A stretch of 64,000 bases of DNA from the IMG/VR virus record IMGVR_UViG_3300009184_000029, positions 158,830 through 222,829 of that record. The stretch is one strand, 5' to 3'. The notes under the pieces were generated by a model. That model had not been told where the DNA came from and made no database searches. It saw only the letters and a program-made list of their open reading frames with translations. Numbering within the stretch: the first letter of the stretch is position 1; every line of letters starts with the position of its first letter. Below, in pieces: positions 2,610 through 53,080 of this stretch. The translations under genes and the position numbers were made by a program.

Positions 2610-2617
2610 TATTTATA
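2610..2617 (+). promoter_or_regulatory. Putative late promoter TATTTATA
   Basis: Recurrent intergenic motif; here 12 nt upstream of ATG 2630. Confidence 0.5.
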
Positions 2618-2629
2618 TAAAAAAAAGTT

Positions 2630-2854
2630 ATGGACATTAAAACTGCAATTAATAATTATCTTGGTAAACAAGCAAGAATTACTGAAAAGGATAATGGTAA
2701 TGGATTTAAAGAAGTTTGTGATTTAGATACTGGAGATTGTTATACAGTAAGAATGAAAGATGGTCTTATTGAAAGAGTTGACAACACATATCAAACAAAC
2801 AAAAAAATAAAAGTAGAAACTAATAACGGATTTAAACAACTTCTAAATGGCTAA
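2630..2854 (+). CDS. Small hypothetical protein (74 aa, EVCDLDTGDCY motif)
   Basis: Clean ORF with A-rich start, overlapping the next gene. Confidence 0.8.
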   Translation: MDIKTAINNYLGKQARITEKDNGNGFKEVCDLDTGDCYTVRMKDGLIERVDNTYQTNKKIKVETNNGFKQLLNG

Positions 2855-3506
2855 TAAAATATCTGAAAAAATATTGTCTGAATTGGCAAGACACAAAAGT
2901 ATTAATAATTACTTAATGGAACAACCTGTTCCACCACCGCCACCACCTCCACCCGCACCTGACGCTGGTGCTGTTCCACCACCACCTGCACCTGATGCCG
3001 CCGCACCTGCTCCTGCACCTGCACCTGCTGAAGATGCTAATAAAGTTGATGTTACTAAAGACCCAGATGTTGAAAAAATTGGTGACGAAAAAAGTAAAAA
3101 GAAAGACGATAAAGGTGATGAAGAAATTGAAGTCACAGATTTAGTTACATCTCAAAAAAATATTGAGGGGAAACAAGAAGAGTACTTTGAAAATTTATTT
3201 AAACAATTACAAGATTTAGAAAGTAGATTAACTGATATGGACTCAATCGTAAATAAATTAAACGATATTGAAGCTAAAATTGAAAAATATAGAGTTAAAA
3301 GTCCTGAAGAAAAATTGGAACTTAGAAGTATTGATTCTGCACCATTTAATCAAAAACTATCTCAATTCTTTCAAGATAAAGAAGAAGATTTAGAAGCAAC
3401 AGGGAAAGAGTATATTCTAACTTCTGATGAAGTTGAGGACTTTAGTCCTGATGAAATCAGAGGAAGTTTCACACAGGCTCCTGACCAAGAATTCAAAAAA
3501 TACTAA
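2847..3506 (+). CDS. Pro/Ala-rich acidic coiled-coil protein, possible head/scaffold-associated protein
   Basis: Poly-Pro and PA repeats, acidic coiled coil, N-terminal ILSE/LMEQ motifs. Confidence 0.6.
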   Translation: MANKISEKILSELARHKSINNYLMEQPVPPPPPPPPAPDAGAVPPPPAPDAAAPAPAPAPAEDANKVDVTKDPDVEKIGDEKSKKKDDKGDEEIEVTDLVTSQKNIEGKQEEYFENLFKQLQDLESRLTDMDSIVNKLNDIEAKIEKYRVKSPEEKLELRSIDSAPFNQKLSQFFQDKEEDLEATGKEYILTSDEVEDFSPDEIRGSFTQAPDQEFKKY

Positions 3507-3512
3507 TTAGTA

Positions 3513-3544
3513 TTTGACAAAAACGGCTGACACACTTACATTTG
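3513..3544 (+). promoter_or_regulatory. Bacteroidota-type promoter (TTTG-N20-TACATTTG), also readable as TTGACA-N17-TACATT
   Basis: Exact -33/-7 consensus upstream of the SSB gene. Confidence 0.7.
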
Positions 3545-3571
3545 TTTATTAACTATTAATTTATATATATC

Positions 3572-4414
3572 ATGGCGACAAATTCACTAGATGCTGTACT
3601 CGCTCAGTATGAAAAAGCGAAAAGTGGAGGAAACTCTACAAACAAAATGTCTCAAGAAGACAGAATGAAAAAATATTTTGCGGCGATATTGACGCAGAAT
3701 GAAACATCGGGACAGAAACGTCTTCGTATTTTACCAACCCCTGATGGGTCATCACCTTTTAAAGAGGTATGGTACCATGAGGTACAAGTTGAGGGTAAAT
3801 GGAATAAAATCTATGACCCAGGTAAAAACAATAACGAGCGTTCACCTTTGACTGAAATTCATGACGAATTGATGTCAACAGGTAAAGAGTCCGATAAGGA
3901 ACTTGCTAAATCTTACAAACCACGTAAATTCTACATCGTTAAGGTTATTGACCGAGATAACGAAGCGGATGGAGTGAAGTTTTGGAGATTTAAACACAAC
4001 TACAAGAACGAAGGTATTCTTGACAAAATCATTCCAATTTGGAAGGCTAAAGGTGATATTACTGACCCTGTTAATGGTCGTGATTTAATCATTGAGTTAG
4101 CTAAGGCTAAGACTCCAAAAGGAGCAACTTACACAGTTATTCAAACTGTAATGCATGATGACCCATCTCCTGTTCACACAGATGCGGAAACTGCTAAGAC
4201 ATGGACTGAAGACCCACTTACTTGGGCTGACGTTTACTCTAAAAAACCTGTTGAATATTTGGAAGCTATTGCTCGTGGAGAAACTCCAAGATGGTCTTCA
4301 GAATTAGGTAAATATGTTTACGGTGATGAGGCATCAGAAATGAGTGTTGGTGGAGGTATGACAATCTCTGACCCTCAGGCAGATGCTGAACCTGATGGTG
4401 ACTTACCATTCTAA
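3572..4414 (+). CDS. Single-stranded DNA-binding protein (T4 gp32-like)
   Basis: RLRILP..F.E.WYH, VIDRD, DITDP..GRDL motifs; acidic tail ending DLPF; lies next to recA. Confidence 0.85.
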   Translation: MATNSLDAVLAQYEKAKSGGNSTNKMSQEDRMKKYFAAILTQNETSGQKRLRILPTPDGSSPFKEVWYHEVQVEGKWNKIYDPGKNNNERSPLTEIHDELMSTGKESDKELAKSYKPRKFYIVKVIDRDNEADGVKFWRFKHNYKNEGILDKIIPIWKAKGDITDPVNGRDLIIELAKAKTPKGATYTVIQTVMHDDPSPVHTDAETAKTWTEDPLTWADVYSKKPVEYLEAIARGETPRWSSELGKYVYGDEASEMSVGGGMTISDPQADAEPDGDLPF

Positions 4415-4419
4415 TTTAT

Positions 4420-4465
4420 ATGGATGGACACTTGAATTGACAAAGTGTCCATCCATTCTTATTTT
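4420..4465 (+). terminator. 14-bp perfect hairpin (terminator-like) overlapping a TTGACA-N17-TATTTT promoter
   Basis: ATGGATGGACACTT (4420-4433) / AAGTGTCCATCCAT (4443-4456), loop GAATTGACA, followed by T-rich tract. Confidence 0.65.
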
Positions 4466-4495
4466 TATACAAACAATTTAAACGAATAGACATTT

Positions 4496-11806: not shown

Positions 11807-11831
11807 ATCCCGAGCTAGGTCGGGATTTTTT
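11807..11831 (+). terminator. Rho-independent terminator after nrdA
   Basis: ATCCCGA-gctagg-TCGGGAT followed by T run. Confidence 0.8.
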
Positions 11832-11868
11832 ATTTTCATTATGATTTACTGAAAATTTTACAACATTA

Positions 11869-11876
11869 TATTTATT
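11869..11876 (+). promoter_or_regulatory. Putative late promoter TATTTATT
   Basis: TATTTAT ends 5 nt before ATG 11881 of the baseplate operon. Confidence 0.5.
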
Positions 11877-11880
11877 TGAT

Positions 11881-12339
11881 ATGGCAGATGGAAGAACATA
11901 CGGTATAAATTTTCCTTTTAAAGATTCTTTAAATGGTAAATATTTGGATTTGTCCGATACTGCTGATGAAGAAATCAGAAGTAATTTAATCCACTTATTA
12001 TTATCTAGAAAAGGAAGTAGGTATTTTTTACCTGATTTTGGGACTCGATTATATGAATATATTTTTGAACCACTTGATGGACCAACATTTACCGATATTG
12101 AAGCGGAAATCAGAGATGCTGTTGAGAAGTATATTCCAAATCTAACAATAAATGGAATTAATATAACTTCAACTGAAAGTGAAGAGGGGAGTGATGTTGT
12201 GACTACAAATCAAGACATTTTAAGAACTGTTGATGCTGGCTCACAATCAATACCTGATTATACTGCGAAAATAAGAGTTGACTACACAATAACAAATGAT
12301 GCATTTAAGAGCAAAGATTTTGTAATAATTAACCTATAA
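11881..12339 (+). CDS. Baseplate wedge subunit gp25/GPW-like
   Basis: IRSNLIHLLLSRKGSRYFLPDFGTRLYEYIFEP is the typical gp25 signature. Confidence 0.92.
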   Translation: MADGRTYGINFPFKDSLNGKYLDLSDTADEEIRSNLIHLLLSRKGSRYFLPDFGTRLYEYIFEPLDGPTFTDIEAEIRDAVEKYIPNLTINGINITSTESEEGSDVVTTNQDILRTVDAGSQSIPDYTAKIRVDYTITNDAFKSKDFVIINL

Positions 12340-14213: not shown

Positions 14214-14221
14214 TATTTATA
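14214..14221 (+). promoter_or_regulatory. Putative late promoter TATTTATA
   Basis: TATTTAT ends 6 nt before ATG 14227. Confidence 0.55.
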
Positions 14222-14226: not shown

Positions 14227-17200
14227 ATGGGTAAAAACTTTAGAATTAGGACAAAGGTTGGAGTAGATACGAGAGTTGAAGCCAAGTTAGAACAAGATTT
14301 TGATTTTTTAGAAATTCTTTCTTTAAAATTAACTCAGCAACAAGTTTACAATAGACCAACCTCAAACTATGGAGTTTTATGTGGTAGAGTTTACGCTAAT
14401 AATGGTTTTGGTGTTCCTAACGCAAAAGTATCAGTTTTTATTCCTCTAACTGATGAGGATTCTAACAACCCTGTAATATCAAGAATATATCCTTATAGAA
14501 ATTTAAATACTCAAAATGAAGATGGGTATCGGTATAATTTATTACCATATGTTGCATCATATACAGGACACGTACCAACAGGAACATTTCCTGATAGAGA
14601 AGACATTTTAAAAGATAAATCTCTAAGTTATACCTATGAAAAATATTATAAATTCACCGCCAAAACAAATGATGCGGGTGATTTTATGATATTTGGAGCA
14701 CCTGTTGGGAATCACACAATTGTGATGGATGTTGACGTTTCTGACATTGGTCAGTTTTCATTAACACCCCAAGATTTATTAAGAATAGGTAGAGCAACTG
14801 AAGCTCAACTTGATGGTGCTAAATTTAAAGAATCAACAGATTTAGATTCTCTACCTCAAATAATCGGAATTAAAAAGACAATAGATATTAATCCATTTTG
14901 GGGTGACCCTGATTTGGCGACAATCGCGGTAACAAGAGTTGACTTTAATCTTTTAGAGGAGGCAAATATTGAATTTAAACCTACATGTGTATTCATGGGT
15001 TCATTAATTTCAGGTATTGATACTAAGGCAATTTCTAAAACGTGTAAAGTTAAAGTTAGAGCAGGTGATTTATGTGAATTAATTACAGGTCCTGGACAAA
15101 TTTTAGCGATTAGACAAACAGTTAATTTTGATAAATTAGGAAGACCCATATTAGAACAGTATAAGGTAGAAAATGACGGACAGGTAATTGATGAAAACGG
15201 TACTTGGATGATTGACCTACCAATGAATATGGATTACGTGTATACTGATGAAGAAGGTAAACAACAAATAAGTTATGACCCAAGTATTGGAATACCAACA
15301 AAAGGTAGATATAGATTTAAAATTAAATGGAATCAATCTGACAAGTCAACAGAACAATTAAAAAGAGGGTATTTCTTAATTCCCAACGTTAAAGAATATG
15401 GATGGGATAAAGATAATTTGGGATTAAATCCGGCGAAAGATTTAAACCCTCCCGCAACTGTACCCCCAACAATTAGTGCTGCGACAATAAGTACACCATC
15501 GGTAACTGGACCTCCTGTTATATCTTACCAAATTGACCAACCATTGGTTGATTTTGCTAATACTTCTTTTGGTAAATTTACAAGGTCATATTCATTTAGT
15601 TTAAGTTGGTTTGATTATGTAAATCCTCAGTCAGCAATTAATTGTGACGACACATTCTATGAGTTCCAATATAATAAAGTTTATACTGTATCTCAGTTAA
15701 TTGACAAATATAGAAGTGGAAAATTACCTGCAAGATTTTTAGGATTTAAAAATTGTTTAGATGATAAATGCGCCGGAAATACTGAAAAATTTCCAGTTAA
15801 TGACGGACACTATAACATAACATTTTTATACGTATTACTTACCGCATTAATAACTTTAGCAAAACCAATTGTTTTAATTATTGTTTTAATATTTGCGATT
15901 TTAGCTTGGATTTACAGATTAATTTCTGAGTTTATTTGCGATAAAATAGTTCCGTTACTTAGAAATTTAGGAAGAACAAGAACTGTTGCCGGTTTTGATT
16001 TTGTTATTTGTCCTACGTGTAATGGTACTGCAGATGATTTAGAGAATAAATGGTGTGATAGACCAAACCCATTTACAGATAAAAGATTTCCTTTGTTATT
16101 ACAAGATGATGGTGATTGTTCATTTTGTGACTGTAAAGATAGTGGAGAATCTTTGGCGGGAAATGTATATGGAGCGGTTAACTCTAGTTGTTTGGCAGAC
16201 CTTTCATCAACATCTAAATGGTTATATGATGTTAGTATAAGTACAGAATTACAGTCACCACCTCAAATAAATTTATTGGCGGGATTTACGTCTCCATTTT
16301 TTAATTTCGCAACAAGAATGCCAACCACATGTGTATATCCTCAAACATATTCGTATGGTTCATTAGCATTTGATTATGGGTCTGTGTTTTTAACTGAGCA
16401 AGGTGTTGGACCCGCAGTCTTTTCACCGTCATTAACAATTTCTGAAAGATTAAATTTATTTAATACTAAGGCTAAGTATTTCAATAATGGTGGATTAGAT
16501 ATAGATACATTTACATTACCGGCAAGTCATGGTTCAAGTTTAATTAGTACTGAATTAAGCCAAATGAATGTTAACAAAGGAGGATGGAATAGAATTAAAC
16601 TTACAATTTCTTCCGAAGATGCGATTCAAGACCAAACAGATTGGCTAGCAGCTCAAAAACTACCATTACCTGGAGGGGCATACCCAAGTGACGGTTCTTA
16701 TCACTTGGATAATGTAATGATTTTACTTGTTGATGAGAACTGTAAATTGGGTACTACAAGAGCTGGTACTTTAGTTACTTTTAATAATCCTACGTTATCA
16801 TCCGACGTTAATTTAACAGGATTTACAACAACTTCCCAAGGACAAGGAGGTCAAACAATATTTACTCCAACGTTTAATCCATATGGTGGAAGACAAATAA
16901 CGGGAACTCCAATACATAAATCAGCTCAAACTTCAACAACTGCGGGTAAAAATTTGGATGTTTGGTATGCTGACCCAAGTGATGCTAATGTTGAGCCAGT
17001 AATTTTTAATCCTAATCTAATTGTAAAATGGAACCTTATAACTGACCCGTATGTACAAAGTTTAAAAAATATTATAGATGCTAACCAAACAATTTATGGT
17101 GGGCCATTTAATATTAACAATATAAGGGGTGATGCTCCAGGGTCCACATATACAGATGAACTTACATTCCCATATGTAGGTAATAAAGCTTCATACACTA

Positions 17201-32068: not shown

Positions 32069-32076
32069 TAATTATA
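32069..32076 (+). promoter_or_regulatory. Putative late promoter variant TAATTATA
   Basis: TAATTAT ends 5 nt before ATG 32081. Confidence 0.4.
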
Positions 32077-34352: not shown

Positions 34353-34405
34353 TATTCAGAAATATATTTATTTTAATATATTTTCTTACAAAATGATTCC
34401 TCAAT

Positions 34406-34413
34406 TATTTATA
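34406..34413 (+). promoter_or_regulatory. Putative late promoter TATTTATA
   Basis: TATTTAT ends 5 nt before ATG 34418. Confidence 0.55.
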
Positions 34414-34417
34414 TAAT

Positions 34418-36439: not shown

Positions 36440-36454
36440 AAATCATATTAGAAA

Positions 36455-36462
36455 TAATTATA
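36455..36462 (+). promoter_or_regulatory. Putative late promoter variant TAATTATA
   Basis: TAATTAT ends 7 nt before ATG 36469. Confidence 0.4.
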
Positions 36463-36468
36463 TAAACA

Positions 36469-38718
36469 ATGGGATATATACAAAGAAACACCGAAGGATT
36501 ATTAGTTACTAGATTAACAGATACTGGTAGATTAAAATTATCACAAGGTAATTTCAATATTAGTTATTTCCAAGTAGGGGACAGTGAACTTAATTATACT
36601 GCAATAACTGAGTCTTCATATACTAATTTGGATGGTAAATCTATAAATTTTAGATTCAGTGGTTCAAGTGTATTAGAACCCCCATTTAATGCTCAAAATA
36701 CAACAGGTGGGTTACAATCAACAAAAAACGCTGTAAAATACCCAATGTACCTTAATGGTGAAGGGACTACTCAGTATGGTATTCCATTTATGGATTCAAT
36801 TAATGAATCAATTTATAACACTGCAACACCATTAGGATTCTTTTCAGCATGTACACAAGGTTATATGCCTTATATAACTTCTGCTTATACTCTTAATTCT
36901 AGAATGTATAGAAATACTTCAGCTTTTACACCAAGTAATCTTTTTACCGTGTCAGGCAATTTAAACTGTACTAATAGTGCTTCTGCAACTACAGGATTAG
37001 TTGGAAGTTACCTAAGGATATTTTATTCAAATCAAAGTGCTAGTTGTAATTGTGGGACAATACTATCTGTATTTCCATCAATGGTTTATTTAGTTAATAG
37101 TTATAACATTTCGACTTCTGCAGTTACTTTTGATAGAATCACACCTAACTTTAACATATTAGGTTCTGTACCGGGTCAGAGTAGATTATTTTATTATCCA
37201 TCGGGTATGACCGCATTGTATGATACTGTAACACCATCTCAATATTGGTATACTGCGGTAACAAGTTATGAATCTATTTGTACCCCTAATGATGGATACT
37301 CTAAAGTATGGAATATGAATATTCCTTGGACTGAAAATCCTGCAGGATTAAATGATACTGTTAATGAAGGATATGGTCAGTTTGGTTCTGTAAATTATAT
37401 AGGTACTAAAGAATATTTGGGATACATGAGTTCTTTAGGACAATCAGCAACAAGTGAAGTTTACTATGTTAACTCTTTAGGTGATGAAGTTGTTGTAAAA
37501 CCCGAAGACCAAAAAGCGATTGCGATTATACATTATACAAATAATAGTATTATAAATTATTATGGTGAAAAATTTGCGGTAGAACCTAATAGCACAATTT
37601 TAGATTCATCAGGTTACGCTTCTAATTTTAAAGTAATTATGCCAACATTGATGTGGCATAAAAATACCGGAGCAACACCATATGGTGAGACTTTTTATAT
37701 TAATCCTCCATCATTTATTGATGATACAGATGTTTTTAAAGTTAATTATTTAACATCTACTAAGAATTCTGATATGAATTATCCTGGAATTAGATATTTC
37801 GATTTATGGGATAATTATGGTCAGGCTAATGGTAAACCAAGTAGAGTTGGTAAAGTTTTTCCTGATGATAAGTTAGTTGTAATTGATGATGAAGAAATAG
37901 TTGCATCAATGTCATGGGCGTCTAATAGAAATTTCACATTACCTGCACCTAAAGTATCATTAACTCCACCAGATGTTTGTAACCAAAATAGTAATTCAGT
38001 TGGTATTTTGACTGGTACTGACCAAACAATGTGGGTTACATATAGATTTGATAGTGTATTATTCGATGGAATGCATTGTAATTATTATCAGTCAATACAA
38101 GGACCATCTACAGGTTGTTCAATATCAACTCAAAACGTTTCAGTACAATTTGGACCGGAATTTGCATTCATGAATACAGGTTCCACTACAGGATATAGTT
38201 TAAATACTTTTTATATTTTAGCACAAATTACGGACACTGGAGAAAGACCATCCCCAACAGGGTGGAAACAAATGAATTATAATTCAGATTTAGTAGATTA
38301 TGATGTGGTCGGAGCCGGCTCAAACAATTTCATAACAAAAACAGGTATGACTAATGTTAGTTTTGTCATTGACCCTACAAGCTATAATTTGGGTACCTCC
38401 TATGATTTAAGTACTGTATTAACCTTACCGACAAATGGTACTACTGATACGCAAGTTAATTTTGGTGATGAGTATTTCTTCTATGGTAGTATTGAAACTG
38501 ATATTCAAGCAACAATATATGAGATGAGATATAGAATAAATTTACCTAATAATTTATTTACAACTTCATCAAATCCTTCATGGACGGATACATATTCTCC
38601 GTATATGACTGAGATTGGTCTTTACGATTCCGAAAAAAATCTTATGATTTTATCAAAGTTTCAAACACCTGTTAAACGAGACGGCATTCAACAGGCGGTT
38701 GTTAAACTTGATTTCTAA
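36469..38718 (+). CDS. Baseplate/tail-fibre attachment protein (tail-collar-fibre-like termini with large insertion)
   Basis: N-terminal LTDTGRLKLSQGNFNISYFQVGDSE and C-terminal YMTEIGLYDSEKNLMILSK..PVK motifs. Confidence 0.6.
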   Translation: MGYIQRNTEGLLVTRLTDTGRLKLSQGNFNISYFQVGDSELNYTAITESSYTNLDGKSINFRFSGSSVLEPPFNAQNTTGGLQSTKNAVKYPMYLNGEGTTQYGIPFMDSINESIYNTATPLGFFSACTQGYMPYITSAYTLNSRMYRNTSAFTPSNLFTVSGNLNCTNSASATTGLVGSYLRIFYSNQSASCNCGTILSVFPSMVYLVNSYNISTSAVTFDRITPNFNILGSVPGQSRLFYYPSGMTALYDTVTPSQYWYTAVTSYESICTPNDGYSKVWNMNIPWTENPAGLNDTVNEGYGQFGSVNYIGTKEYLGYMSSLGQSATSEVYYVNSLGDEVVVKPEDQKAIAIIHYTNNSIINYYGEKFAVEPNSTILDSSGYASNFKVIMPTLMWHKNTGATPYGETFYINPPSFIDDTDVFKVNYLTSTKNSDMNYPGIRYFDLWDNYGQANGKPSRVGKVFPDDKLVVIDDEEIVASMSWASNRNFTLPAPKVSLTPPDVCNQNSNSVGILTGTDQTMWVTYRFDSVLFDGMHCNYYQSIQGPSTGCSISTQNVSVQFGPEFAFMNTGSTTGYSLNTFYILAQITDTGERPSPTGWKQMNYNSDLVDYDVVGAGSNNFITKTGMTNVSFVIDPTSYNLGTSYDLSTVLTLPTNGTTDTQVNFGDEYFFYGSIETDIQATIYEMRYRINLPNNLFTTSSNPSWTDTYSPYMTEIGLYDSEKNLMILSKFQTPVKRDGIQQAVVKLDF

Positions 38719-38730: not shown

Positions 38731-39321
38731 ATGAAAAATTTAAAAAATACACCCAAGATATTGGGACTAGATGTTTCTACAAAAACAATTGGGTGGGCAT
38801 TATTTGACTTTAAAACTAAAGAATTATTGGAATTAACTCATATTTCTCCTGTTATAAAAAGTAAGTCTGACAATAAAATGGAGGAAATGATACTAAAGTC
38901 TGAAATTTTTAAAAAGAAATTAGACGAGTATAAAAATTTAGGTATTATTAAAGTAGTAATTGAGGAACCTTTATTAAATTCTAATAATGCTTACACCATC
39001 GGAACTCTTTTAAGATATAATACATTAATTACTAAACAAGTATATGATGTACTTGGAGTTGTTCCTGAGTTTGTGTCTACTTATAACTCAAGAAAATTAG
39101 CATTTCCTGAATTAGTTCAAAAAAATAATAAAGATAAATTTGTATTATTTGGTGGTTATCCTAAAGACTGTGATAAAAAACAAATTATTTGGGAATTAGT
39201 CTCTAAAAAAGAACCACAAATTACATGGTTATATACAAAGAATAATACTTTAAAGAAAGAAAACTTTGATATGACCGACGCTTATACCGTTGTTCTTAGT
39301 TATTTAAATTCTAACAATTAA
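38731..39321 (+). CDS. RuvC-like Holliday junction resolvase / RNase H-fold nuclease
   Basis: ILGLDVST..IGWA, VVIEEP, DMTDAY acidic tetrad. Confidence 0.8.
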   Translation: MKNLKNTPKILGLDVSTKTIGWALFDFKTKELLELTHISPVIKSKSDNKMEEMILKSEIFKKKLDEYKNLGIIKVVIEEPLLNSNNAYTIGTLLRYNTLITKQVYDVLGVVPEFVSTYNSRKLAFPELVQKNNKDKFVLFGGYPKDCDKKQIIWELVSKKEPQITWLYTKNNTLKKENFDMTDAYTVVLSYLNSNN

Positions 39322-41479
39322 TATCGTTAGTCACTCCACTAGCACTTCCTATTCTATTTGATGTAAATGTGAAATCTGATGGGTATGATGGATTCCATCC
39401 GGCAATCTGTTGTATATATGTCAGTTTAGGACCTGTAAAGGTACTACCATAGAAAGATTGGTTAATTTCTACACCAGGTACTGGTTCCTTTTGAACTATT
39501 GTTCTCTCACCTATTCCTAAATAAGGACATACTCTATAAACGTATGTGTATATTGACGCTGATGGTGTAGGTGTATTAGTTGGTGTTAAAGTAGGTGTTG
39601 TGGTAACAGTTTGAGTCGGTGTTTGACTAGGTACAGGAGTACAGAATCTACAATCAAATAAATTCCCACTATCAACACTATTTAAAGTGTTTAAAGGTGA
39701 ACTGAATACTTCCCCAATAAACGCTCCGCAAATTGATACGTTATCAACGGTTGCTTTAATTATTGCCCCTATTGGTAGAGTCCAAGCCACACTAACTAAA
39801 TAAACTTGACCTGTCGAACAATCTCTAAGTTGTTTTGTTAACTGACTTGTAAATGATTTTTGGAATATATTAAATGTTGTTTCACCTGTAACAAAACAAT
39901 TCTTAGCTGCGTTAGTTGGGGTTAATGTTGGTGTTTGAGAAGGTAGGGGAGGACTTATTGTCACACCTGATACTGAAACTGATTTACCATAACAAACTTG
40001 AGTTGGAGTTGGTGTAGTTGTCGGAGTTGTTGTTAATGTTGGGGTAAGTGTGGGAGTTGGTGTGATTAAACTTGAAATTGAAAAATCACAATTAAAAATA
40101 GAATCAAATGTGAATGTTGAACAATCGATATTAGGTGTTGGGGTAGGTGTTGCAGGTATGTTCGCAAAAAATGATGAACTGAAATCAGGACATAATCCAT
40201 AGTAAGGACTTGCTCCCGATATAACACAATCATATCCTGGTAAAGTACCTAAACACCATCCTGTATAACCTGTGTTATAATATATAAATGCGGGTGTCGT
40301 TGATGTATTAGAATAATAGATATTATATCCGTTATATGTCTTATATCTATAATATGTTCCATCATATTGTGAGTACCCACTAAAGTTAGTGTAAATATAA
40401 TATTGTGAAGTTGGGCAACCTGTAAGAGGGGTTACTGTTGGTGTTGGGGTTGGAGTTGATGTGTTTGAAGGTGATACAGTTGGAAATGCTGATAAAGTTG
40501 GTAGTGGTGTATGTGTAATACTTGGAGTTGGAGTATTACTTGCAGTCGGTGTATTGGTTACACCTGGTGTTTCAGTTATTGATGGTGTTGGTGTTTGAGT
40601 GGATGTAATTGTTGGTGTAGGACTTGGAGTTCTTGTTGGGGTATTTGATGGTGTGATTGAAATTGTTGGAGTTACAGTTGCGGTTTGTGTTGGGGTTGGA
40701 GTCACTGAAGTTATACAACCTGCATCAGTTAAACATGCGATATTTGGATTGTAGTATGTACTTGTGAAAGCTGATGAATTTGCGACAGAATTATATAAAG
40801 TGTTATCTTTATAATAACTAAATCTTACATAATCACTTAAATTTGTTAGGGAACTATTAACATTAACACATATTGTTGTGGACGTTATTGAGGTATAGGA
40901 TAATTTATTATACACCCCAGGACACGTGTAGTACTCTAAAGATAATCTGTTATTATTTACTGGTGAAGTATTACCTGACGCCGAATTAAGGTCTGATTGT
41001 CGAATTGTAAATTGAATACAATTACATAAAGATGTTGTTGATGGGGTTACGGTTGCGGTTGGTGTTTTAGTTTGAGTTGTGGTTGGAGTACTTGTTAATG
41101 TAATCGTAGGTGTCGGTGTTTGAGTTGCAGTATTAGTTGGGGTTGGTGTGTGAGTAGGAGTTGCCGAAGGAGTGTTAGTTGGAGTTGATGTTGGAGCAGC
41201 GGTTGAGGTTGGTGTAGGTGTTGGAACACTAGCACATGTGTATATTGTTGTACATTGTGTACAACTTGTGTAAGTTATACCATTACCTGACAAGTAGTTA
41301 TACACAGGTAATCCTGATGTAAAAGTAGTATATACTGCTAAACTACAGCCTGTGTAACTATCCGTCTGAATATAGTACGTTGTACCTGCGGAGAAAGAAT
41401 ACGTGGGTGAAAGGTATTGAAACTGAAATCGTGAACCATCACAACAACCCGAAAATCCTATCCAATTTAAACTTGCCAT
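39311..41479 (-). CDS. Modular Cys-rich protein with about six Pro/Thr linkers
   Basis: Small Cys-containing domains alternate with TPT tracts; coupled to 41479..41700. Confidence 0.75.
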   Translation of the reverse strand: MASLNWIGFSGCCDGSRFQFQYLSPTYSFSAGTTYYIQTDSYTGCSLAVYTTFTSGLPVYNYLSGNGITYTSCTQCTTIYTCASVPTPTPTSTAAPTSTPTNTPSATPTHTPTPTNTATQTPTPTITLTSTPTTTQTKTPTATVTPSTTSLCNCIQFTIRQSDLNSASGNTSPVNNNRLSLEYYTCPGVYNKLSYTSITSTTICVNVNSSLTNLSDYVRFSYYKDNTLYNSVANSSAFTSTYYNPNIACLTDAGCITSVTPTPTQTATVTPTISITPSNTPTRTPSPTPTITSTQTPTPSITETPGVTNTPTASNTPTPSITHTPLPTLSAFPTVSPSNTSTPTPTPTVTPLTGCPTSQYYIYTNFSGYSQYDGTYYRYKTYNGYNIYYSNTSTTPAFIYYNTGYTGWCLGTLPGYDCVISGASPYYGLCPDFSSSFFANIPATPTPTPNIDCSTFTFDSIFNCDFSISSLITPTPTLTPTLTTTPTTTPTPTQVCYGKSVSVSGVTISPPLPSQTPTLTPTNAAKNCFVTGETTFNIFQKSFTSQLTKQLRDCSTGQVYLVSVAWTLPIGAIIKATVDNVSICGAFIGEVFSSPLNTLNSVDSGNLFDCRFCTPVPSQTPTQTVTTTPTLTPTNTPTPSASIYTYVYRVCPYLGIGERTIVQKEPVPGVEINQSFYGSTFTGPKLTYIQQIAGWNPSYPSDFTFTSNRIGSASGVTNDINC

Positions 41480-41700
41480 TATACGTTAAAACAACTTATT
41501 AATGTACAAGTATCGTTATCAATTACTTTCAAACAATACTGTGTATTTTTATCATATGGAGGTGGTACAGTAAAATTATAAGGTAACTCACCTGATGTTA
41601 TTTGTGAAACGTAAATACAATTAGATTGATTTGAGTCACAAATGAAAATTTGGTAAGGAGTTGAACCTGTTATATTATTAACTGTTACTTGTACTGACAT
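41479..41700 (-). CDS. Stand-alone copy of the 73-aa SprB-like adaptor module
   Basis: VNNITGSTPYQIFICD...C...LKVIDNDTC aligns with the N-termini of 31091 and 32925. Confidence 0.75.
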   Translation of the reverse strand: MSVQVTVNNITGSTPYQIFICDSNQSNCIYVSQITSGELPYNFTVPPPYDKNTQYCLKVIDNDTCTLISCFNV

Positions 41701-41704
41701 ATTT

Positions 41705-41712
41705 TATAAATA
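41705..41712 (-). promoter_or_regulatory. Putative late promoter TATTTATA (minus strand)
   Basis: Plus strand TATAAATA at 41705-41712; TATTTAT core ends 5 nt before ATG 41700. Confidence 0.55.
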
Positions 41713-41742
41713 AATATAGAAAATGGTAAAACTTTGTGAAGT

Positions 41743-41772
41743 TTGACAAACCTAAGTTTTTAATTATATTTT
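41743..41772 (+). promoter_or_regulatory. Putative early/middle promoter TTGACA-N16-TATATT(TT)
   Basis: Directly upstream of the primase gene. Confidence 0.55.
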
Positions 41773-48508: not shown

Positions 48509-48541
48509 TTTGGGGATATTGTTTTTTTAATCTTATATTTG
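48509..48541 (+). promoter_or_regulatory. Bacteroidota-type promoter TTTG-N21-TATATTTG
   Basis: Exact -7 consensus upstream of the 48558-sigma operon. Confidence 0.65.
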
Positions 48542-49067: not shown

Positions 49068-49868
49068 ATGATAAACAAAACAACAGTTATACCCATTAAC
49101 CAAGATGAAGTTAGTTTTTACCTTAAAGACCTTAGAAAGTTGAAGGTAATGACACCTGATAGAGAAAAAGAGCTGTCAAAAAAAATACAATCCCCTAATA
49201 TCTCACAGAAAGAGAAAGATTTAATTGAAAAAGAATTAGTCGAAGGTAATTTAAGATTTGTTATTAGTGTTGCTAAACAGTATCAGAATCAAGGAGTTGA
49301 TTTACCTGACCTTATTGCGGAAGGTAACATTGGATTACTTAAAGCGATTAAGAATTTTGACTGGACTAAAAACCTTAGATTTATATCATACGCAGTATGG
49401 TGGGTTAGACAATCAATCTTACAATGTTTAAATGAACATTCAAGAACTATCCGTATACCTGTGAATGTTATTCAAGACTATCAGAAAGAGAAAAAAGAAA
49501 CGGAAAAAAGTGGTGAGAATATCTCAGATAGATTTTTAAATCTACCATCAACGATTAATTTACAAAGTGAAATTAATGAAGAAGGTGACACATTAATTGA
49601 TTTGATTGTTAATGTGGACGCTCTTAGACCTGACGAATTACTTGATGGTAAAACACAACTAAAAGACGGTTTGATGAATATCCTTAATGTTCTTGATGAA
49701 AGAGAAAGACAAATAGTTGAGGATTATTACGGAATATCTGGAACACCAAGAACACTTGAGGACATCGGGTCTGACTTCAGTCTAACTAAAGAAAGAGTTA
49801 GACAAATCAAAGAGAAGGCTTTGAGAAAATTAAGGAATGAGAGTTCTACTTTGTTTGACTACATTTAA
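49068..49868 (+). CDS. rpoD: RNA polymerase sigma-70 factor, RpoD/SigA family (Bacteroidota-like, no region 1.1)
   Basis: NLRFVISVAKQYQNQG, DLIAEGNIGL, RFISYAVWWVRQSI, LTKERVRQIKEKALRKLR. Confidence 0.92.
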   Translation: MINKTTVIPINQDEVSFYLKDLRKLKVMTPDREKELSKKIQSPNISQKEKDLIEKELVEGNLRFVISVAKQYQNQGVDLPDLIAEGNIGLLKAIKNFDWTKNLRFISYAVWWVRQSILQCLNEHSRTIRIPVNVIQDYQKEKKETEKSGENISDRFLNLPSTINLQSEINEEGDTLIDLIVNVDALRPDELLDGKTQLKDGLMNILNVLDERERQIVEDYYGISGTPRTLEDIGSDFSLTKERVRQIKEKALRKLRNESSTLFDYI

Positions 49869-49871: not shown

Positions 49872-49897
49872 AAGGAGGGGTAACCCTCCTTTATTAT
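49872..49897 (+). terminator. Rho-independent terminator after the sigma gene
   Basis: AAGGAGGG-gtaa-CCCTCCTT (GNRA loop) plus T-rich tail. Confidence 0.8.
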
Positions 49898-49954
49898 TTA
49901 TATCAAATATTAATTTTGTATAATTATATATTATAAACTTAATTTAAATTAGTT

Positions 49955-50233: not shown

Positions 50234-51090
50234 AAAATTGGTTTTCTAATAACTTGAGAAAAATAATAATCACGGCTTTCGTGATTCCGATACTACTGGT
50301 TGCATTTGTTTCAATATCACACGTAACTACTTTTTACGGAATTTCAAATCCAATAACATGGGCAATTTATTTGTCTGTTGGTATTGAAATTGCTGCCTTA
50401 TCAGCACTTGCTGCGGTATCAGTTAATATGGGTCGATTTGTGTATTTACCATTTATTGTTGTGACTATAATCCAAATGTTAGGCAATATTTTCTTTTCTT
50501 TCACATATATTGATGAAACTTCACAACTTTTTACAGATTGGATTAATATGGTTGGTGGATTGTTTGAAAATATGGGTATTGAAAAAACAGATTTAAATAC
50601 ACATAAATCTATACTTTCATTTTTAACAGGAGGATTACTTCCTGTAATTTCATTAACGTTTGCTCACATGCTCGTTAAATTTTCAGAAAATGAAAATAAT
50701 AAAAAAGAAACACAACCTGTTATTGATTTAGAGGAAGTCAGTAAAAAAATTGCAAAAGAAGAATTTGTTGAAGATTCTAAATTAAAATGGAACCCAACTG
50801 ACGAACAGATTGAAATGTTAGAGAAAATACTGAAAGGTAAATACGAGAGTCCTGAGAAAGAAAAAGTTGAAGAAAAACCATACGTTCCATCAGAAGATGA
50901 ACTTAAAAAGTTTGAGGAAGTACTATCTAAGTATGATAATGGTAGTGACTATGATGAAAATCTAAACACCTACCAAAACATAGTTAATGAAAATCAAGAA
51001 CCCACAGAGGTTCAAAAAAAAAATCATGAATCAGACGAAAACATCAATGAGGATTACAAGGTTTTAAATTATTTAGGAAGAAATGATTGA
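50230..51090 (+). CDS. Multi-pass membrane protein with acidic C-terminal tail
   Basis: About four hydrophobic segments; ATGA overlap with upstream gene. Confidence 0.7.
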   Translation: MKNWFSNNLRKIIITAFVIPILLVAFVSISHVTTFYGISNPITWAIYLSVGIEIAALSALAAVSVNMGRFVYLPFIVVTIIQMLGNIFFSFTYIDETSQLFTDWINMVGGLFENMGIEKTDLNTHKSILSFLTGGLLPVISLTFAHMLVKFSENENNKKETQPVIDLEEVSKKIAKEEFVEDSKLKWNPTDEQIEMLEKILKGKYESPEKEKVEEKPYVPSEDELKKFEEVLSKYDNGSDYDENLNTYQNIVNENQEPTEVQKKNHESDENINEDYKVLNYLGRND

Positions 51091-51676
51091 AATTAAAAAA
51101 TGGGGTAAATTAAAACCGTATTCTAAAAGTAAGATAAAACGACAAATAGTTTTATGTTCTACTTTAAGACCGGCAAACTATTATCTACAATCTTTAAAGT
51201 ATCGACATAATGGAGAATACAATAAAGTTCCGAATTATGTTATCACAAGGGATGGTGATATTCTAAATGTATTACCTGATTTATCATATCGTAAATTTTT
51301 TGACGATGATGATGTAAATAAAAATTCAATAATTATAAGTTTAGAAAATTTAGGTTGGTTAAGACAATTACCTTTAAAAATATTTTATACTAATTGGATT
51401 GGAGATATTTATAAAGAGAATGTTTTTGAAAAAAAGTGGAGAGAAAAAGATTTTTGGCAACCTTTTACGGATAAACAAATTGAGAGTCTTTCAAAATTAT
51501 GTGACCACCTTTTTAAAAAATACTCAATAAAAAATAAATTTATAGGACATAATACCAAAGTAGACGGTATCAAAATATTTGAAGGAGTTGTCTGTAAAAG
51601 TAATTTTGATACAAAATACACCGATGTAAGTCCGGCTTTTGATTTTGACTTTTTAAAAAAAATTGAAAATGAATAA
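51083..51676 (+). CDS. N-acetylmuramoyl-L-alanine amidase-like (Amidase_2 fold), catalytic residues apparently altered
   Basis: IVLCST, NYVITRDG, NSIIISLEN, FTDKQIESL..L, FIGHN, DVSPAFD. Confidence 0.7.
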   Translation: MIEIKKWGKLKPYSKSKIKRQIVLCSTLRPANYYLQSLKYRHNGEYNKVPNYVITRDGDILNVLPDLSYRKFFDDDDVNKNSIIISLENLGWLRQLPLKIFYTNWIGDIYKENVFEKKWREKDFWQPFTDKQIESLSKLCDHLFKKYSIKNKFIGHNTKVDGIKIFEGVVCKSNFDTKYTDVSPAFDFDFLKKIENE

Positions 51677-52298
51677 TAGTTACGATGAAATAAAAAACCT
51701 ACTTAAAAAAAGTAGAATGATTGCTCAGTCAAAATACCCTTCAATTAATGAAGGTGTTAATGATATAAAGAAGAAATATCTTATAACTGAGGATGATGGT
51801 ATTATTGATGGTGAATCAGATGTTCAAAATTATGAAGTTGCTAAAAGTATTGAGGGAGAGATTAGGAATGATGACCCAAAAAGAGACGAAGAACAACAAG
51901 GTTATAGAATCTCAGGTGGTATTTTAGTAATTCATGCTACAGATAAAACTGATTTAGAATTAACTACTGACGAAAAAAAATCATTTCAAGAGACTATGGA
52001 TGAATTTGTTGAAGAAGTTTCTGACTTGGTTAATTTTGGGCCTTTAAACATATATTCAAATAATGTTGATTGGTCAGGTAAAATAGTTGATTTAGATATT
52101 GAATTTTTCTATACAATCGGAGAATCTAACGGTATATATATGACAGGTGAGATGTTAAAGATAGATGATAACTTTACCGAAACTATTGAAAAATTACAAA
52201 GTTATTATGAGAAGTTTAAGTCAAAGTGGGCTAAAATTTTGGCGTCAAGAAAGAAAACTAATGAAAAAAAAATAGGTAAAGATGAATCTGAAAGATAA
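51663..52298 (+). CDS. Acidic hypothetical protein, possible internal head protein
   Basis: YDEIKNLL, INEG, LITE motifs; start probably ATG 51669. Confidence 0.6.
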   Translation: MKMNNSYDEIKNLLKKSRMIAQSKYPSINEGVNDIKKKYLITEDDGIIDGESDVQNYEVAKSIEGEIRNDDPKRDEEQQGYRISGGILVIHATDKTDLELTTDEKKSFQETMDEFVEEVSDLVNFGPLNIYSNNVDWSGKIVDLDIEFFYTIGESNGIYMTGEMLKIDDNFTETIEKLQSYYEKFKSKWAKILASRKKTNEKKIGKDESER

Positions 52299-53067
52299 AT
52301 TTATTGCAACATTAGATAGAGCGTTTGGGTCTAATTATGATAAATTAGGACCTAATAGTTTTTTCACAAAGGAAAAAATTAAAAATGCGGTTAATACTGA
52401 AACTAATAAATTCCCAACCTTAAAGTCTGAGTCTAAGAAAAAAGAAACTAAAGAAACTACCTCAAGTGGGTCAAGTGGAGGATTTGTACCTTCTTTACAG
52501 TTTAAAGAAAACAAACAAGTTAAAAAATTAACAGAAGCTGAAAGAACCGCAATGGCGAAGTTAAGAGACTTGTCAAAAAAATATGCTTGTAAAGGTTCTA
52601 AAGATTGTACGGATAAAGATAAGATTGAAGACACTTATGAAGATTTAAAGAAACAATATGCAATTGGTCTTAAAGTTGAGAAAGAGCATAAATCAGGTGA
52701 CCCAAAACAAATTGTCATTGACCATTTATCAGAAGACCCAAACTATTACAGTAAATTAAAAAAGATGGAGTTTAAAGAGATGACATCTTCGGCTTCATCA
52801 GGACAATACACAGGGGCAGCATTTTTAGCAAAATCACAAAGTAAAGAAGACTGGAAACCATCGCAGAAAAAACAATGGAAGGGTGGACAATTTGTTAAAG
52901 TTAAAGATAAATGTAATAAATTCCCATATTGTAATCAGGGAATTGGAGCTTTAGAGTTTTTTGAGAATGAAAATATTAAAGAATCTGTTAAAAACTTATC
53001 AAGACAGTATGGATTATCTAAAGAAACAATTATAAAAATACTATCTGAATCTCTTAAACTTAAATAA
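52282..53067 (+). CDS. DUF5661-like domain protein, possible internal head protein
   Basis: GLKVEKEH...IVIDHLSEDPNYYSKLKKME; duplicated E.TSS.SSG.(F/Y) motif. Confidence 0.6.
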   Translation: MNLKDKFIATLDRAFGSNYDKLGPNSFFTKEKIKNAVNTETNKFPTLKSESKKKETKETTSSGSSGGFVPSLQFKENKQVKKLTEAERTAMAKLRDLSKKYACKGSKDCTDKDKIEDTYEDLKKQYAIGLKVEKEHKSGDPKQIVIDHLSEDPNYYSKLKKMEFKEMTSSASSGQYTGAAFLAKSQSKEDWKPSQKKQWKGGQFVKVKDKCNKFPYCNQGIGALEFFENENIKESVKNLSRQYGLSKETIIKILSESLKLK

Positions 53068-53072
53068 CGATA

Positions 53073-53080
53073 TATTTATA
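53073..53080 (+). promoter_or_regulatory. Putative late promoter TATTTATA
   Basis: In the 28-nt gap before ATG 53096. Confidence 0.5.

What the first reader, a model, noticed from the sequence alone, without database searches (positions are those of the whole stretch)
2610..53080. Candidate late promoter TA(T/A)TTATA positioned for leaderless transcripts
Seen: a TATTTAT/TAATTAT core ends 5, 6, 5, 5, 7 and 5 nt before the ATGs at 11881, 14227, 32081, 34418, 36469 and 41700 (minus), all of them structural genes. It is further upstream at 2610, 49895 and 53073. The full 8-mer TATTTATA is the reverse complement of the T4 late promoter TATAAATA. The two bases before it vary, so it is not simply the host TAnnTTTG element. 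Inference: a -10-only late promoter whose start site falls at or just before the ATG, giving leaderless or near-leaderless late mRNAs, read by a phage sigma or factor not identified in this window. The genome is AT-rich, so only the positional constraint argues against chance.
Basis: partly seen in the sequence, partly recalled or inferred. Interest (0 to 1): 0.65.

Follow-up and report, generated by a model that had tools for sequence, protein, structure and literature searches.

The report
Phage late promoter set on start codons
The short DNA word TATTTAT just upstream of many genes of this freshwater giant phage is a conserved phage-specific promoter, a two-base variant of the phage T4 late promoter, and it often lies so close to the start codon that the messages would have no leader, though no RNA data could test that.

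Summary
In the whole 222.8-kb phage record, TATTTAT ends 4-7 nt before 34 gene starts and 8-45 nt before 34 more. It is 4-fold enriched between genes, 2-fold depleted inside genes on both strands, strand-specific, and lacks any -35/-33 partner. Orthologous sites in dozens of relatives keep the 7-mer invariant after terminators while flanks drift. Spacing falls in two classes (4-7 or 12-19 nt), and the same gene switches class between relatives. This fits a -10-type promoter, not a ribosome signal.

The same motif heads terminase, portal, sheath, tube and tape-measure genes in cultured Flavobacterium phage immuto. It also precedes Shine-Dalgarno leaders in Microcystis phage Mel-JY01. All these phages share a divergent 243-aa sigma weakly related to T4 gp55; the two cultured ones lack the RpoD-like sigma.

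- An RpoD-like sigma gene does lie in the window (49068-49868), but it is probably not the motif's reader.
- The TAATTAT variants are weaker.
- A structural role is shown only for 11881.

Leaderless initiation rests on geometry alone, because no RNA reads exist. I class it as a new variant of a known kind.

The parts
11869..11875 (+). TATTTAT promoter core, 5 nt before ATG 11881 (gp25-like baseplate wedge gene 11881-12339)
   Evidence: All 44 distinct orthologous upstream regions keep the 7-mer, 43 of them 4-5 nt before the ATG, while flanking columns are 39-73% conserved. PHROG baseplate wedge.
11809..11836 (+). Terminator-like hairpin plus T-run ending the previous transcription unit, just upstream of the 11869 promoter
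   Evidence: Sequence read. The same hairpin plus T-run, with different and compensating stem sequences, is present in most relatives.
14214..14220 (+). TATTTAT core, 6 nt before ATG 14227 (2175-aa protein, no family match)
   Evidence: The orthologue in complete relative G001 has TATTTAT 14 nt before its ATG. No PHROG or Pfam match.
32069..32075 (+). TAATTAT one-mismatch variant, 5 nt before ATG 32081; doubtful member
   Evidence: The variant is only weakly enriched. The G001 orthologue has no box at this spacing, only a TATTTAT 28 nt upstream.
34406..34412 (+). TATTTAT core, 5 nt before ATG 34418 (673-aa protein); a second copy lies at 34365-34371
   Evidence: The gene has no relatives in IMG/VR, so the site could not be footprinted.
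36455..36461 (+). TAATTAT variant, 7 nt before ATG 36469 (749-aa protein); probably functional
   Evidence: The G001 orthologue carries canonical TATTTAT 5 nt before its ATG.
41706..41716 (-). Two overlapping TATTTAT copies, 5 and 9 nt before the ATG at 41700 (73-aa ORF 41479-41700, followed by the 722-aa ORF 39311-41479)
   Evidence: The G001 orthologue has TATTTAT 17 nt before its ATG.
2610..2616 (+). TATTTAT core, 13 nt before ATG 2630 of a 74-aa ORF (2630-2854); short-leader class
   Evidence: The G001 orthologue has the same motif at the same 13-nt spacing.
49873..49901 (+). Terminator hairpin after the sigma gene, followed at once by TATTTAT (49895-49901), 53 nt before ATG 49955
   Evidence: Relatives show TATTTAT downstream of the sigma gene at varied spacing, in some inside the terminator loop.
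53073..53079 (+). TATTTAT core, 16 nt before ATG 53096; short-leader class
   Evidence: The G001 orthologue has the same motif at 16 nt.
54446..54452 (+). Further TATTTAT just after the stop of 53096-54445, 39 nt before ATG 54492; candidate leadered promoter
49068..49868 (+). RpoD-like sigma-70 family gene (266 aa) inside the window
   Evidence: Pfam Sigma70_r2 (60.5 bits) and r4 (60 bits) are above their cut-offs, and r1.2 is weak. Best NCBIfam models are RpoD/RpoS. Best solved-structure relatives are SigA/RpoD chains. It is a core gene, with 547 IMG/VR relatives.
48534..48541 (+). Host-type Bacteroidota -7 box TATATTTG, 16 nt before ATG 48558, heading the two-gene operon that ends with the RpoD-like sigma
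   Evidence: A TAnnTTTG box 12-22 nt before this operon is kept in nearly all relatives.
3514..3544 (+). Host-type promoter (TTG, 20 nt, TACATTTG) before the gp32-like gene 3572-4414; shown for contrast with the TATTTAT class
   Evidence: Conserved across about 40 relatives, including an invariant spacer core. Pfam gp32.

Best explanation
TATTTAT(A/T) is the -10-type, -35-less promoter of the phage's own late transcription programme. Host RNA polymerase core, carrying a phage sigma, binds it.

The most likely reader is the divergent, gp55-like 243-aa sigma at record position 86823-87554, outside the window. The RpoD-like sigma at window 49068-49868 is less likely.

The element equals the T4 late promoter TATAAATA with its two central A's changed to T, in the same orientation. 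Host sigma-A first reads TTG/TAnnTTTG promoters, which head gp32, the RpoD-like sigma operon and small early genes. The TATTTAT class then drives virion and many other genes.

At 4-7 nt the start site falls on or within 1-3 nt of the A of ATG, giving leaderless or nearly leaderless mRNA. At 12-19 nt the leader would be about 8-13 nt.

Shown: the motif statistics, its conservation, its orientation, its class separation from host-type promoters, and its co-occurrence with the divergent sigma. Inferred: which sigma reads it, the timing in this phage, and the exact start site.
For: Genome-wide position and specificity:
- 34 genes have the motif at 4-7 nt and 34 at 8-45 nt.
- 178 genes have none. 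Of these, 100 abut the previous gene (gap of 3 nt or less), so the motif is not needed for translation.
- It is enriched in intergenic DNA (86 against 20.5 expected, the top of all 128 A/T 7-mers). It is depleted in coding DNA on both strands (34 against 76 sense, 47 against 114 antisense).

Conservation in relatives:
- Terminase relatives show a terminator hairpin with compensating changes, a T-run, then invariant TATTTAT, 5-7 or 13-16 nt before the ATG. The motif is absent where the terminase gene abuts the previous gene.
- All 44 orthologous sites of 11881 keep it.
- Spacing is bimodal in pooled relatives and in complete relative G001: 33 sites at 4-7 nt, 6 at 8-11 nt, 43 at 12-19 nt.
- Single genes switch class between relatives.

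Separation from host-type promoters:
- There is no TTG at -33/-35 for the 73 TATTTAT sites. For TAnnTTTG sites, 8 of 21 have TTG 22-23 nt upstream.
- The sigma operon keeps a host-type box in nearly all relatives.

Geometry: the host -7 box spans -12 to -5, with 4-5 nt to the start site. T precedes the ATG in 25 of 34 close-spaced sites, against 90 of 178 genes without the motif.

The divergent sigma:
- PHROG 'late sigma transcription factor' family, E 8.5e-4, and the only hit to that family in the record.
- Profile comparison with eight gp55 homologues gives 70-83% probability, E 4e-5 to 9e-6.
- The predicted fold best matches sigma region-2 domains, probability 0.97-0.98.
- It is a core gene, with at least 585 relatives.

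Co-occurrence:
- Full-length homologues exist in Flavobacterium phage immuto (probability 97.7%) and Microcystis phage Mel-JY01 (97.2%). Both lack an RpoD-like sigma.
- Both still show TATTTAT 6.5-8 times enriched upstream of genes in the sense orientation only.
- In immuto it heads structural genes. In Mel-JY01 it lies upstream of Shine-Dalgarno leaders.
Against: - No transcript 5' end or timing data exist. Only metagenomic DNA contigs hold the phage.
- The gp55 relationship is weak. There was no hit by sequence to solved structures, and all Foldseek E-values were above 0.09.
- No gp45-type clamp domain was found in this record, in complete relative G001, or in immuto.
- In this genome the divergent sigma gene sits deep in a long operon whose only recognisable promoter is itself a TATTTAT site. 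This raises a bootstrapping problem and favours the early-expressed RpoD-like sigma.
- Many motif-headed genes are small ORFs of unknown function at 9-58 kb of the record, so 'late' is not shown for this phage.
- With 4 nt of spacing, a start site 4-5 nt beyond the 8-mer would fall inside the ATG. The start distance must therefore be shorter or more flexible than the host's.
Confidence: 0.68

Rival explanations
1. The same promoter, but read by the RpoD-like sigma encoded in the window (49068-49868). The divergent sigma would then serve another, unrecognised class of promoters.
For: - The RpoD-like sigma operon has a conserved host-type promoter, so it can be made first.
- It is a core gene of the clade.
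- In this genome the divergent sigma gene lies downstream of a TATTTAT-headed operon.
Against: - Immuto and Mel-JY01 have the motif but no RpoD-like sigma at E <= 1.
- The motif has no -35 partner, although this sigma has an intact region 4.
Confidence: 0.2
2. The motif is a real promoter, but the close-spaced sites do not give leaderless mRNA. The start site lies elsewhere, for example inside the gene to serve downstream genes. The first gene would then be translated from read-through transcripts.
For: - No 5' ends are known.
- Spacing of 4 nt is shorter than the host's 4-5 nt measured from the 8-mer.
- Leaderless mRNAs are rare in the host phylum: 5.5% in F. psychrophilum, and 3.7% of leaders under 10 nt in B. 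thetaiotaomicron.
Against: - Many close-spaced sites follow terminators or sit in 14-32 nt divergent spacers, where no read-through in the right direction can exist.
- The spacing is sharply bimodal with a trough at 8-11 nt.
- T is enriched just before the ATG.
- Five host-type TAnnTTTG boxes end exactly 4 nt before an ATG, which is the measured start distance.
Confidence: 0.25
3. The motif is a variant of the host sigma-A -7 box and is read by unmodified host holoenzyme.
For: - It shares TA at its first two positions and T at the fifth with TAnnTTTG, and it sits at the same distance from starts.
- A few sites carry both boxes overlapping.
Against: - It has A where the host box has its nearly invariant T-7, and A/T where the host has G-5.
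- It has no -33 TTG, unlike the host-type sites in the same genome.
- The same motif occurs in a Microcystis phage, whose host belongs to another phylum.
- In immuto, early genes use a different and highly uniform box.
Confidence: 0.07
4. The motif acts on RNA as a translation-initiation or regulator-binding signal that replaces Shine-Dalgarno pairing.
For: - There is no Shine-Dalgarno signal upstream of this phage's genes.
- The motif is AU-rich and close to many start codons.
Against: - 178 of 246 genes lack it, including 100 tightly coupled ones.
- The same gene carries it at 5 or 17 nt in different relatives.
- In Mel-JY01 it lies 20-40 nt upstream, with a Shine-Dalgarno sequence between it and the ATG.
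- It is avoided on the antisense strand of genes too.
- It follows terminators.
- It disappears where the terminase gene is fused into the upstream operon.
Confidence: 0.04

Closest known systems
Phage T4 late promoters (TATAAATA at -13 to -6) read by gp55, with gp33 and the gp45 sliding clamp
   Same: - An 8-bp A/T element at the -10 position with no -35 element.
- Six of eight bases identical in the same orientation.
- It heads virion genes in the cultured relative.
- The phage is a distant T4-type myovirus: gp32, T4-type large terminase, and baseplate wedge proteins of the PHROG wedge families.
- Its candidate reader aligns to gp55 with the A-12 pocket tyrosine (T4 Y97, here Y103) and F86 (here F92) conserved.
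   Different: - The two central bases are TT, not AA.
- The gp55 residues that hold A-9 (N13, H95) are E24 and Y101 here, and T99 is G105. This rests on alignments of 70-83% probability.
- The candidate sigma is longer (243 against 185 aa), with an extra C-terminal helical domain.
- No gp45-type clamp was detected.
- About half of the promoters abut the start codon, whereas T4 late mRNAs have Shine-Dalgarno leaders (the T4 point is from general knowledge).
Bacteroidota sigma-A promoters (-33 TTTG, -7 TAnnTTTG)
   Same: - Same position relative to gene starts.
- Both classes occur in this genome, and both can end 4 nt before an ATG.
   Different: - No -33 element.
- A at the host's T-7 position and no G-5.
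- The two classes head different sets of genes.
Leaderless mRNAs of Actinobacteria, Deinococcus-Thermus and archaea
   Same: - The promoter is placed so that transcription would begin on the A of an ATG.
- There is no Shine-Dalgarno sequence.
   Different: - Here it would be a phage-encoded programme in a host phylum where leaderless mRNAs are about 4-6% of the total.
- No 5' ends have been mapped.
Flavobacterium phage vB_FspM_immuto (Immutovirus) and Microcystis phage Mel-JY01
   Same: - Both share the divergent sigma at full length.
- Both share the TATTTAT upstream motif.
- Both share a baseplate wedge protein at about 26% identity.
   Different: - They are smaller (160 and 190 kb) and lack an RpoD-like sigma.
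- Leaders are mostly 11-26 nt in immuto (only 4 of 33 sites at 4-7 nt). In Mel-JY01 they are 20-40 nt and contain Shine-Dalgarno sequences.

Membership tests
T4-type late transcription system (gp55-read promoters) | A gp55-family sigma is encoded | tested here: inconclusive
   The 243-aa ORF at record 86823-87554 hits phrog_234 at E 8.5e-4 (hmmscan) and 5.4e-5 (six-frame), and is the only hit in the record. hhalign against eight gp55 homologues gives 70-83% probability. The fold matches sigma region 2. There is no phmmer hit to solved structures.
T4-type late transcription system (gp55-read promoters) | Promoter is a single 8-bp A/T element at -10 with no -35 element | tested here: met
   There is no positional TTG or other upstream signal for the 73 sites. 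The flanks are unconserved in 44 orthologous sites.
T4-type late transcription system (gp55-read promoters) | Consensus TATAAATA | tested here: not met
   The consensus here is TATTTAT(A/T), matching 6 of 8 bases with the central AA replaced by TT.
T4-type late transcription system (gp55-read promoters) | Element lies at -13 to -6 of mapped start sites | not testable with these tools
   No RNA run with raw reads holds the phage, and contigs cannot show transcript starts.
T4-type late transcription system (gp55-read promoters) | gp45 sliding clamp as activator (with gp33) | tested here: not met
   Pfam gp45-slide_C and DNA_PPF give no match at E <= 1 in this record, in complete relative G001, or in immuto. 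gp33 was not searched. A very divergent clamp cannot be excluded.
T4-type late transcription system (gp55-read promoters) | Heads late (virion) genes | tested here: met
   In this phage it heads the gp25-like baseplate wedge gene, large terminase, tail sheath (30 nt upstream) and a head-tail adaptor-like gene. In immuto it heads the annotated terminase, portal, sheath, tube, hub and tape-measure genes. Timing itself was not measured.
Bacteroidota sigma-A promoter | -7 box TAHHTTTG with nearly invariant T-8, T-7, T-6 and G-5 | tested here: not met
   The motif has A at the T-7 position and A/T at G-5.
Bacteroidota sigma-A promoter | -33 TTTG/TTG element about 19-21 nt upstream | tested here: not met
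   There is no enrichment for the 73 TATTTAT sites, whereas 8 of 21 TAnnTTTG sites have TTG 22-23 nt upstream.
Leaderless mRNA | Primary 5' end on the A of the start codon | not testable with these tools
   No RNA reads exist. Only geometry is available: the motif ends 4-7 nt before the ATG, and the host's -7 box lies 4-5 nt from the start site.
Leaderless mRNA | No Shine-Dalgarno sequence; ATG start | tested here: inconclusive
   G is 4-13% at every position from -20 to -1. All the starts are ATG, but my ORF caller accepted only ATG. Coding conservation begins at these ATGs in relatives.
Sigma-70 family, group 1/2 (RpoD-like), for window 49068-49868 | Regions 2 and 4 present above Pfam cut-offs | tested here: met
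   Sigma70_r2 scores 60.5 bits (cut-off 24) and Sigma70_r4 scores 60 bits (cut-off 24.1). Region 1.2 is weak. RpoD/RpoS models match at E about 1e-51 but below their equivalog cut-offs.

The most novel reading that the evidence does not exclude
A gp55-related sigma family with switched specificity (TATAAATA to TATTTATA) is shared by myoviruses of Bacteroidota and Cyanobacteria. In the freshwater jumbo clade its promoter has been moved onto the start codon. A third to a half of phage transcription units would then be leaderless, in a host phylum where only about 4-6% of mRNAs are. That would give phage late messages a translation route separate from the host's Shine-Dalgarno-independent, leader-dependent initiation.
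Probability: 0.4. Interest if true: 0.75.

Novelty: new variant of a known kind. Interest (0 to 1): 0.62.

Why it matters
- It would define the promoter and a candidate sigma for the late genes of a very abundant, uncultured clade of freshwater jumbo phages (450-600 related IMG/VR contigs per marker gene). This makes their operons and temporal classes readable from sequence.
- It links a promoter change of two bases to changed pocket residues in a gp55-like sigma. That is a testable case of how -10 specificity evolves.
- If the close-spaced class is truly leaderless, it gives a natural system for asking how Bacteroidota ribosomes, which do not use Shine-Dalgarno pairing, handle 5'-terminal AUGs.
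- Because Flavobacterium phage immuto is cultured and carries the same motif and sigma, these questions can be taken to the bench.

Tried and rejected
- **RNA evidence.** The one run search found 19 DNA metagenome runs and one doubtful 'RNA?' run, all kept as contigs. Laying four of them on 32000-37999 gave no starts, and the doubtful run was labelled probably DNA.
- **Near-identical phage records.** None were found.
- **Multisubunit phage RNA polymerase, as in phiKZ.** No Rpb1 domain was found, so this was rejected.
- **A third promoter class with a TTGACA -35 box.** Only 13 intergenic copies against about 6.5 expected. The gp32 example resolves into the host-type TTTG/TAnnTTTG architecture. 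Dropped.
- **Primase (41773) as proof that the motif also heads replication genes.** Its TAATTAT is not conserved in G001, so this is not usable.
- **Footprinting of 34418.** The gene has no IMG/VR relatives.
- **Function of small motif-headed ORFs and of the long minus-strand operon.** PHROG scans gave almost nothing beyond sugar-modification enzymes.
- **Sequence search of the divergent sigma against solved structures.** No hit.
- **My own terminator detector.** It accepted perfect stems only and found few. The terminator argument therefore rests on the aligned relatives.
- **Literature.** A full-text search for TATTTATA with 'promoter' and 'phage' gave nothing relevant.
- **Procedural points.** The large protein searches were not used. 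No genetic code other than table 11 was used.

Full report
**Setting.** The window is the last 64 kb (158830-222829) of a 222,829-bp IMG/VR virus record. The record is 31% G+C and estimated 76% complete. It is a T4-like myovirus in the broad sense. It encodes gp32-like, RecA/UvsX-like and SbcC-like proteins, a primase, a T4-type large terminase, a tail sheath and baseplate wedge proteins. Its nearest cultured kin are very distant: Flavobacterium phage immuto and Microcystis phage Mel-JY01, at about 26% identity in the wedge protein. Each conserved gene has 450-600 related contigs in IMG/VR, among them a complete 321,403-bp genome with terminal repeats, called G001 here. The DNA is found in freshwater, lake and estuary metagenomes.

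A Bacteroidota host is inferred from three observations:
- There is no Shine-Dalgarno signal.
- About ten intergenic promoters show the phylum's TTG-N19/20-TAnnTTTG architecture, where 1.4 would be expected.
- There is kinship to a Flavobacterium phage.

**The observation.** A crude ORF map of the whole record (247 genes, 95% coding) gives these results:
- TATTTA is by far the most over-represented hexamer in the 30 nt before starts: 72 of 246 genes, against 7.7 expected.
- TATTTAT ends 4-7 nt before 34 starts and 8-45 nt before another 34.
- The 20 other 7-mers of the same composition reach at most 11 at that position. The high ones are shifted copies of the same word.
- The reverse complement shows no positional peak.
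- Among genes with at least 40 nt of spacer, the concentration at 4-7 nt has binomial P about 1e-6.
- Intergenic DNA holds 86 copies against 20.5 expected, the most enriched of all 128 A/T 7-mers. Coding DNA is depleted on both strands: 34 against 76 sense and 47 against 114 antisense, and a stop codon in one frame explains only part of the antisense depletion.
- This explains why the window as a whole holds fewer copies than shuffles predict (36 against 54.5).

**Promoter or ribosome signal.** Several independent observations point to a DNA signal that starts transcription units.
1. 178 genes lack the motif, and 100 of them abut the previous gene. All 34 close-spaced sites have at least 12 nt of spacer, just enough to hold the motif.
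2. In about 40 distinct terminase relatives the upstream region is a hairpin (with different but compensating stems), a T-run, then an invariant TATTTAT. Relatives in which the terminase gene is fused to the preceding gene have no motif.
3. All 44 distinct orthologous sites of 11881 keep the 7-mer at 100% while flanks are 39-73% conserved. Many have a second copy just after the terminator.
4. Divergent gene pairs 14-32 nt apart carry two back-to-back copies and nothing else.
5. The word is avoided on the antisense strand of genes, which an RNA signal would not require.
6. In Mel-JY01 the same word lies 20-40 nt upstream, with a GGAG-type Shine-Dalgarno sequence between it and the ATG.

**Two promoter classes.** Host-type TAnnTTTG boxes have a TTG 22-23 nt upstream in 8 of 21 cases. 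The 73 TATTTAT sites have no such partner. Host-type promoters head the gp32 gene, small genes at 25-60 kb of the record, and the operon ending in the RpoD-like sigma. At gp32 the promoter is conserved in about 40 relatives. At the sigma operon a TAnnTTTG box is kept 12-22 nt before the first gene in nearly all relatives. In immuto, a uniform early box TAT(A/C)TTTAG with 21-30 nt leaders heads 23 genes, nearly all small and clustered at 60-76 kb. TATTTAT heads 33 genes there, including terminase, portal, sheath, tube, hub, tape measure and tail spike. This is the best evidence that TATTTAT is a late promoter. For this phage the timing is inferred.

**Which factor reads it.** Two sigma-family genes exist.
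- The first is in the window (49068-49868, 266 aa). It has regions 1.2, 2 and 4 and is RpoD/RpoS-like.
- The second (record 86823-87554, minus strand, 243 aa) is very divergent. Its evidence comprises a weak Sigma70_r2 match, the PHROG 'late sigma transcription factor' family at E 8.5e-4, profile-profile matches to gp55 at 70-83% probability, and a predicted fold whose best local matches are sigma region-2 domains.

Both are core genes of the clade. Immuto and Mel-JY01 have full-length homologues of the divergent sigma only (97.7% and 97.2% probability; no RpoD-like sigma). Both still show TATTTAT 6.5-8 times enriched upstream of genes, with the reverse complement at expectation. In immuto this sigma gene closes the early region and is followed at once by the first TATTTAT-headed gene.

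The motif therefore travels with the divergent sigma across two host phyla. I take that sigma as the likeliest reader (about 0.55), with the RpoD-like sigma second (about 0.2). The counter-argument is that in this genome the divergent sigma gene lies inside a long operon whose only visible promoter is a TATTTAT site.

**Relation to T4.** T4 late promoters are TATAAATA at -13 to -6. The motif here is the same word with the central AA changed to TT. In the gp55 open complex, A-12, A-9 and A-8 are held in pockets formed by Y97, by N13 and H95, and by T99 respectively. In the alignment to the divergent sigma, Y97 and F86 are conserved (Y103, F92), while N13, H95 and T99 are E24, Y101 and G105. A kept A-12 pocket and an altered A-9 pocket fit the promoter difference. 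The alignment is of modest confidence, so this is an inference. No gp45-type clamp was detected, so clamp-dependent activation is not supported.

**Leaderless or not.** In F. psychrophilum and F. johnsoniae the -7 box spans -12 to -5, and the start site lies 4-5 nt beyond it. Aligned the same way, TATTTAT plus one base ends 3-6 nt before the ATG in the close-spaced class. The A of the ATG is therefore the expected start, or the leader is 1-3 nt. Four observations fit this:
- T precedes the ATG in 25 of 34 such sites, against 90 of 178 genes without the motif. A pyrimidine followed by a purine is the usual preferred start context (general knowledge).
- Five host-type boxes also end exactly 4 nt before an ATG.
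- Spacing is bimodal. This genome peaks at 5-6 nt and again at 15-18 nt. G001 has 33 sites at 4-7 nt, 6 at 8-11 nt and 43 at 12-19 nt. Pooled relatives peak at 4-7 and 12-17 nt.
- Single genes switch class between relatives: 11881 at 5 against 17 nt, 14227 at 6 against 14 nt, 41700 at 5 against 17 nt, and terminase at 7 against 13-16 nt.

A gap at intermediate spacings is what one expects if either a 5'-terminal AUG or a leader of about 10 nt works, but very short leaders do not. None of this replaces a mapped 5' end, and none could be obtained. I put leaderless or near-leaderless initiation at about 0.6. It would be unusual for the phylum: 5.5% leaderless in F. psychrophilum, 3.7% of leaders under 10 nt in B. 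thetaiotaomicron, and 87% of leaders over 10 nt in F. johnsoniae.

- A sigma gene is in the window.
- Only 11881 (with 12344) is demonstrably structural. The genes at 14227, 32081, 34418, 36469 and 41700 have no family match beyond a sub-threshold SprB repeat.
- TAATTAT is a weak variant. It is supported at 36469, where G001 has canonical TATTTAT 5 nt before the orthologue. It is not supported at 32081 or at the primase gene 41773.
- Site 2610 serves a 74-aa ORF at 2630, and site 53073 serves 53096. Both spacings are conserved in G001.

**Verdict.** The finding is a real, conserved, phage-specific promoter of the T4 late type with a changed consensus, not described in the searchable literature. 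It has a strong but unproven case for starting transcription on the start codon.

Noticed in passing
window 3514-3571: The gp32 promoter region is conserved across about 40 relatives, including an invariant spacer core (ACGGCTGACAC) between the TTTG and the -7 box. This is more conserved than a spacer needs to be, so it may be an operator.
   Followed up: partly
window 4416-4495: The RecA/UvsX-like gene 4496 is preceded by a conserved GGATGGACAC...GTGTCCATCC hairpin, a T-rich run, and a conserved 'tagacattt' just before the ATG in many relatives. Other relatives have the gene fused to the upstream ORF instead.
   Followed up: partly
loci L293, L298, L306, L311, L336 and others, just downstream of the sigma gene: In many relatives a TATTTAT sits inside the loop of the terminator hairpin that follows the RpoD-like sigma gene (stem ccttc/gaagg). 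This places promoter and terminator in one element.
   Followed up: no
record 15246-15277, 24742-24773, 57633-57646 (L002, L003, L004); window 41701-41772: Divergent gene pairs are separated by only 14-32 nt that consist of two inverted TATTTAT copies. These would be back-to-back promoters with overlapping opened regions.
   Followed up: partly
window 33150-33400, 34650-34900 and 37300-37900: Contigs from other samples show many joints, skips and loose ends here, in Thr/Pro-rich repeat stretches of the 475-, 673- and 749-aa proteins. The 673-aa protein has no relatives in IMG/VR. These are probably hypervariable tail-fibre-like proteins.
   Followed up: no
window 34418-36439 and 28909-31086: There are sub-threshold SprB repeat matches. 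SprB is a Flavobacterium gliding adhesin repeat, so this is a faint hint of host-derived or host-mimicking surface domains.
   Followed up: no
record 87554-110641, minus strand (L001, L006): A run of about 30 tightly packed minus-strand genes includes an aminotransferase and a glycosyltransferase. It looks like a sugar-modification cluster, and the divergent sigma gene lies at its downstream end.
   Followed up: partly
L417 7600-16300 (immuto record 67.6-76.3 kb): About 20 small early genes of immuto each carry a nearly identical 40-nt upstream block: GTTGC, a spacer, TATATTTAGGTATCAATAATTAAAAC. This is a strikingly uniform early promoter-plus-leader cassette.
   Followed up: partly
window 14227-20754: A 2175-aa ORF has no Pfam or PHROG match. 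Its orthologue in G001 is only 39% identical over the first 925 residues.
   Followed up: no
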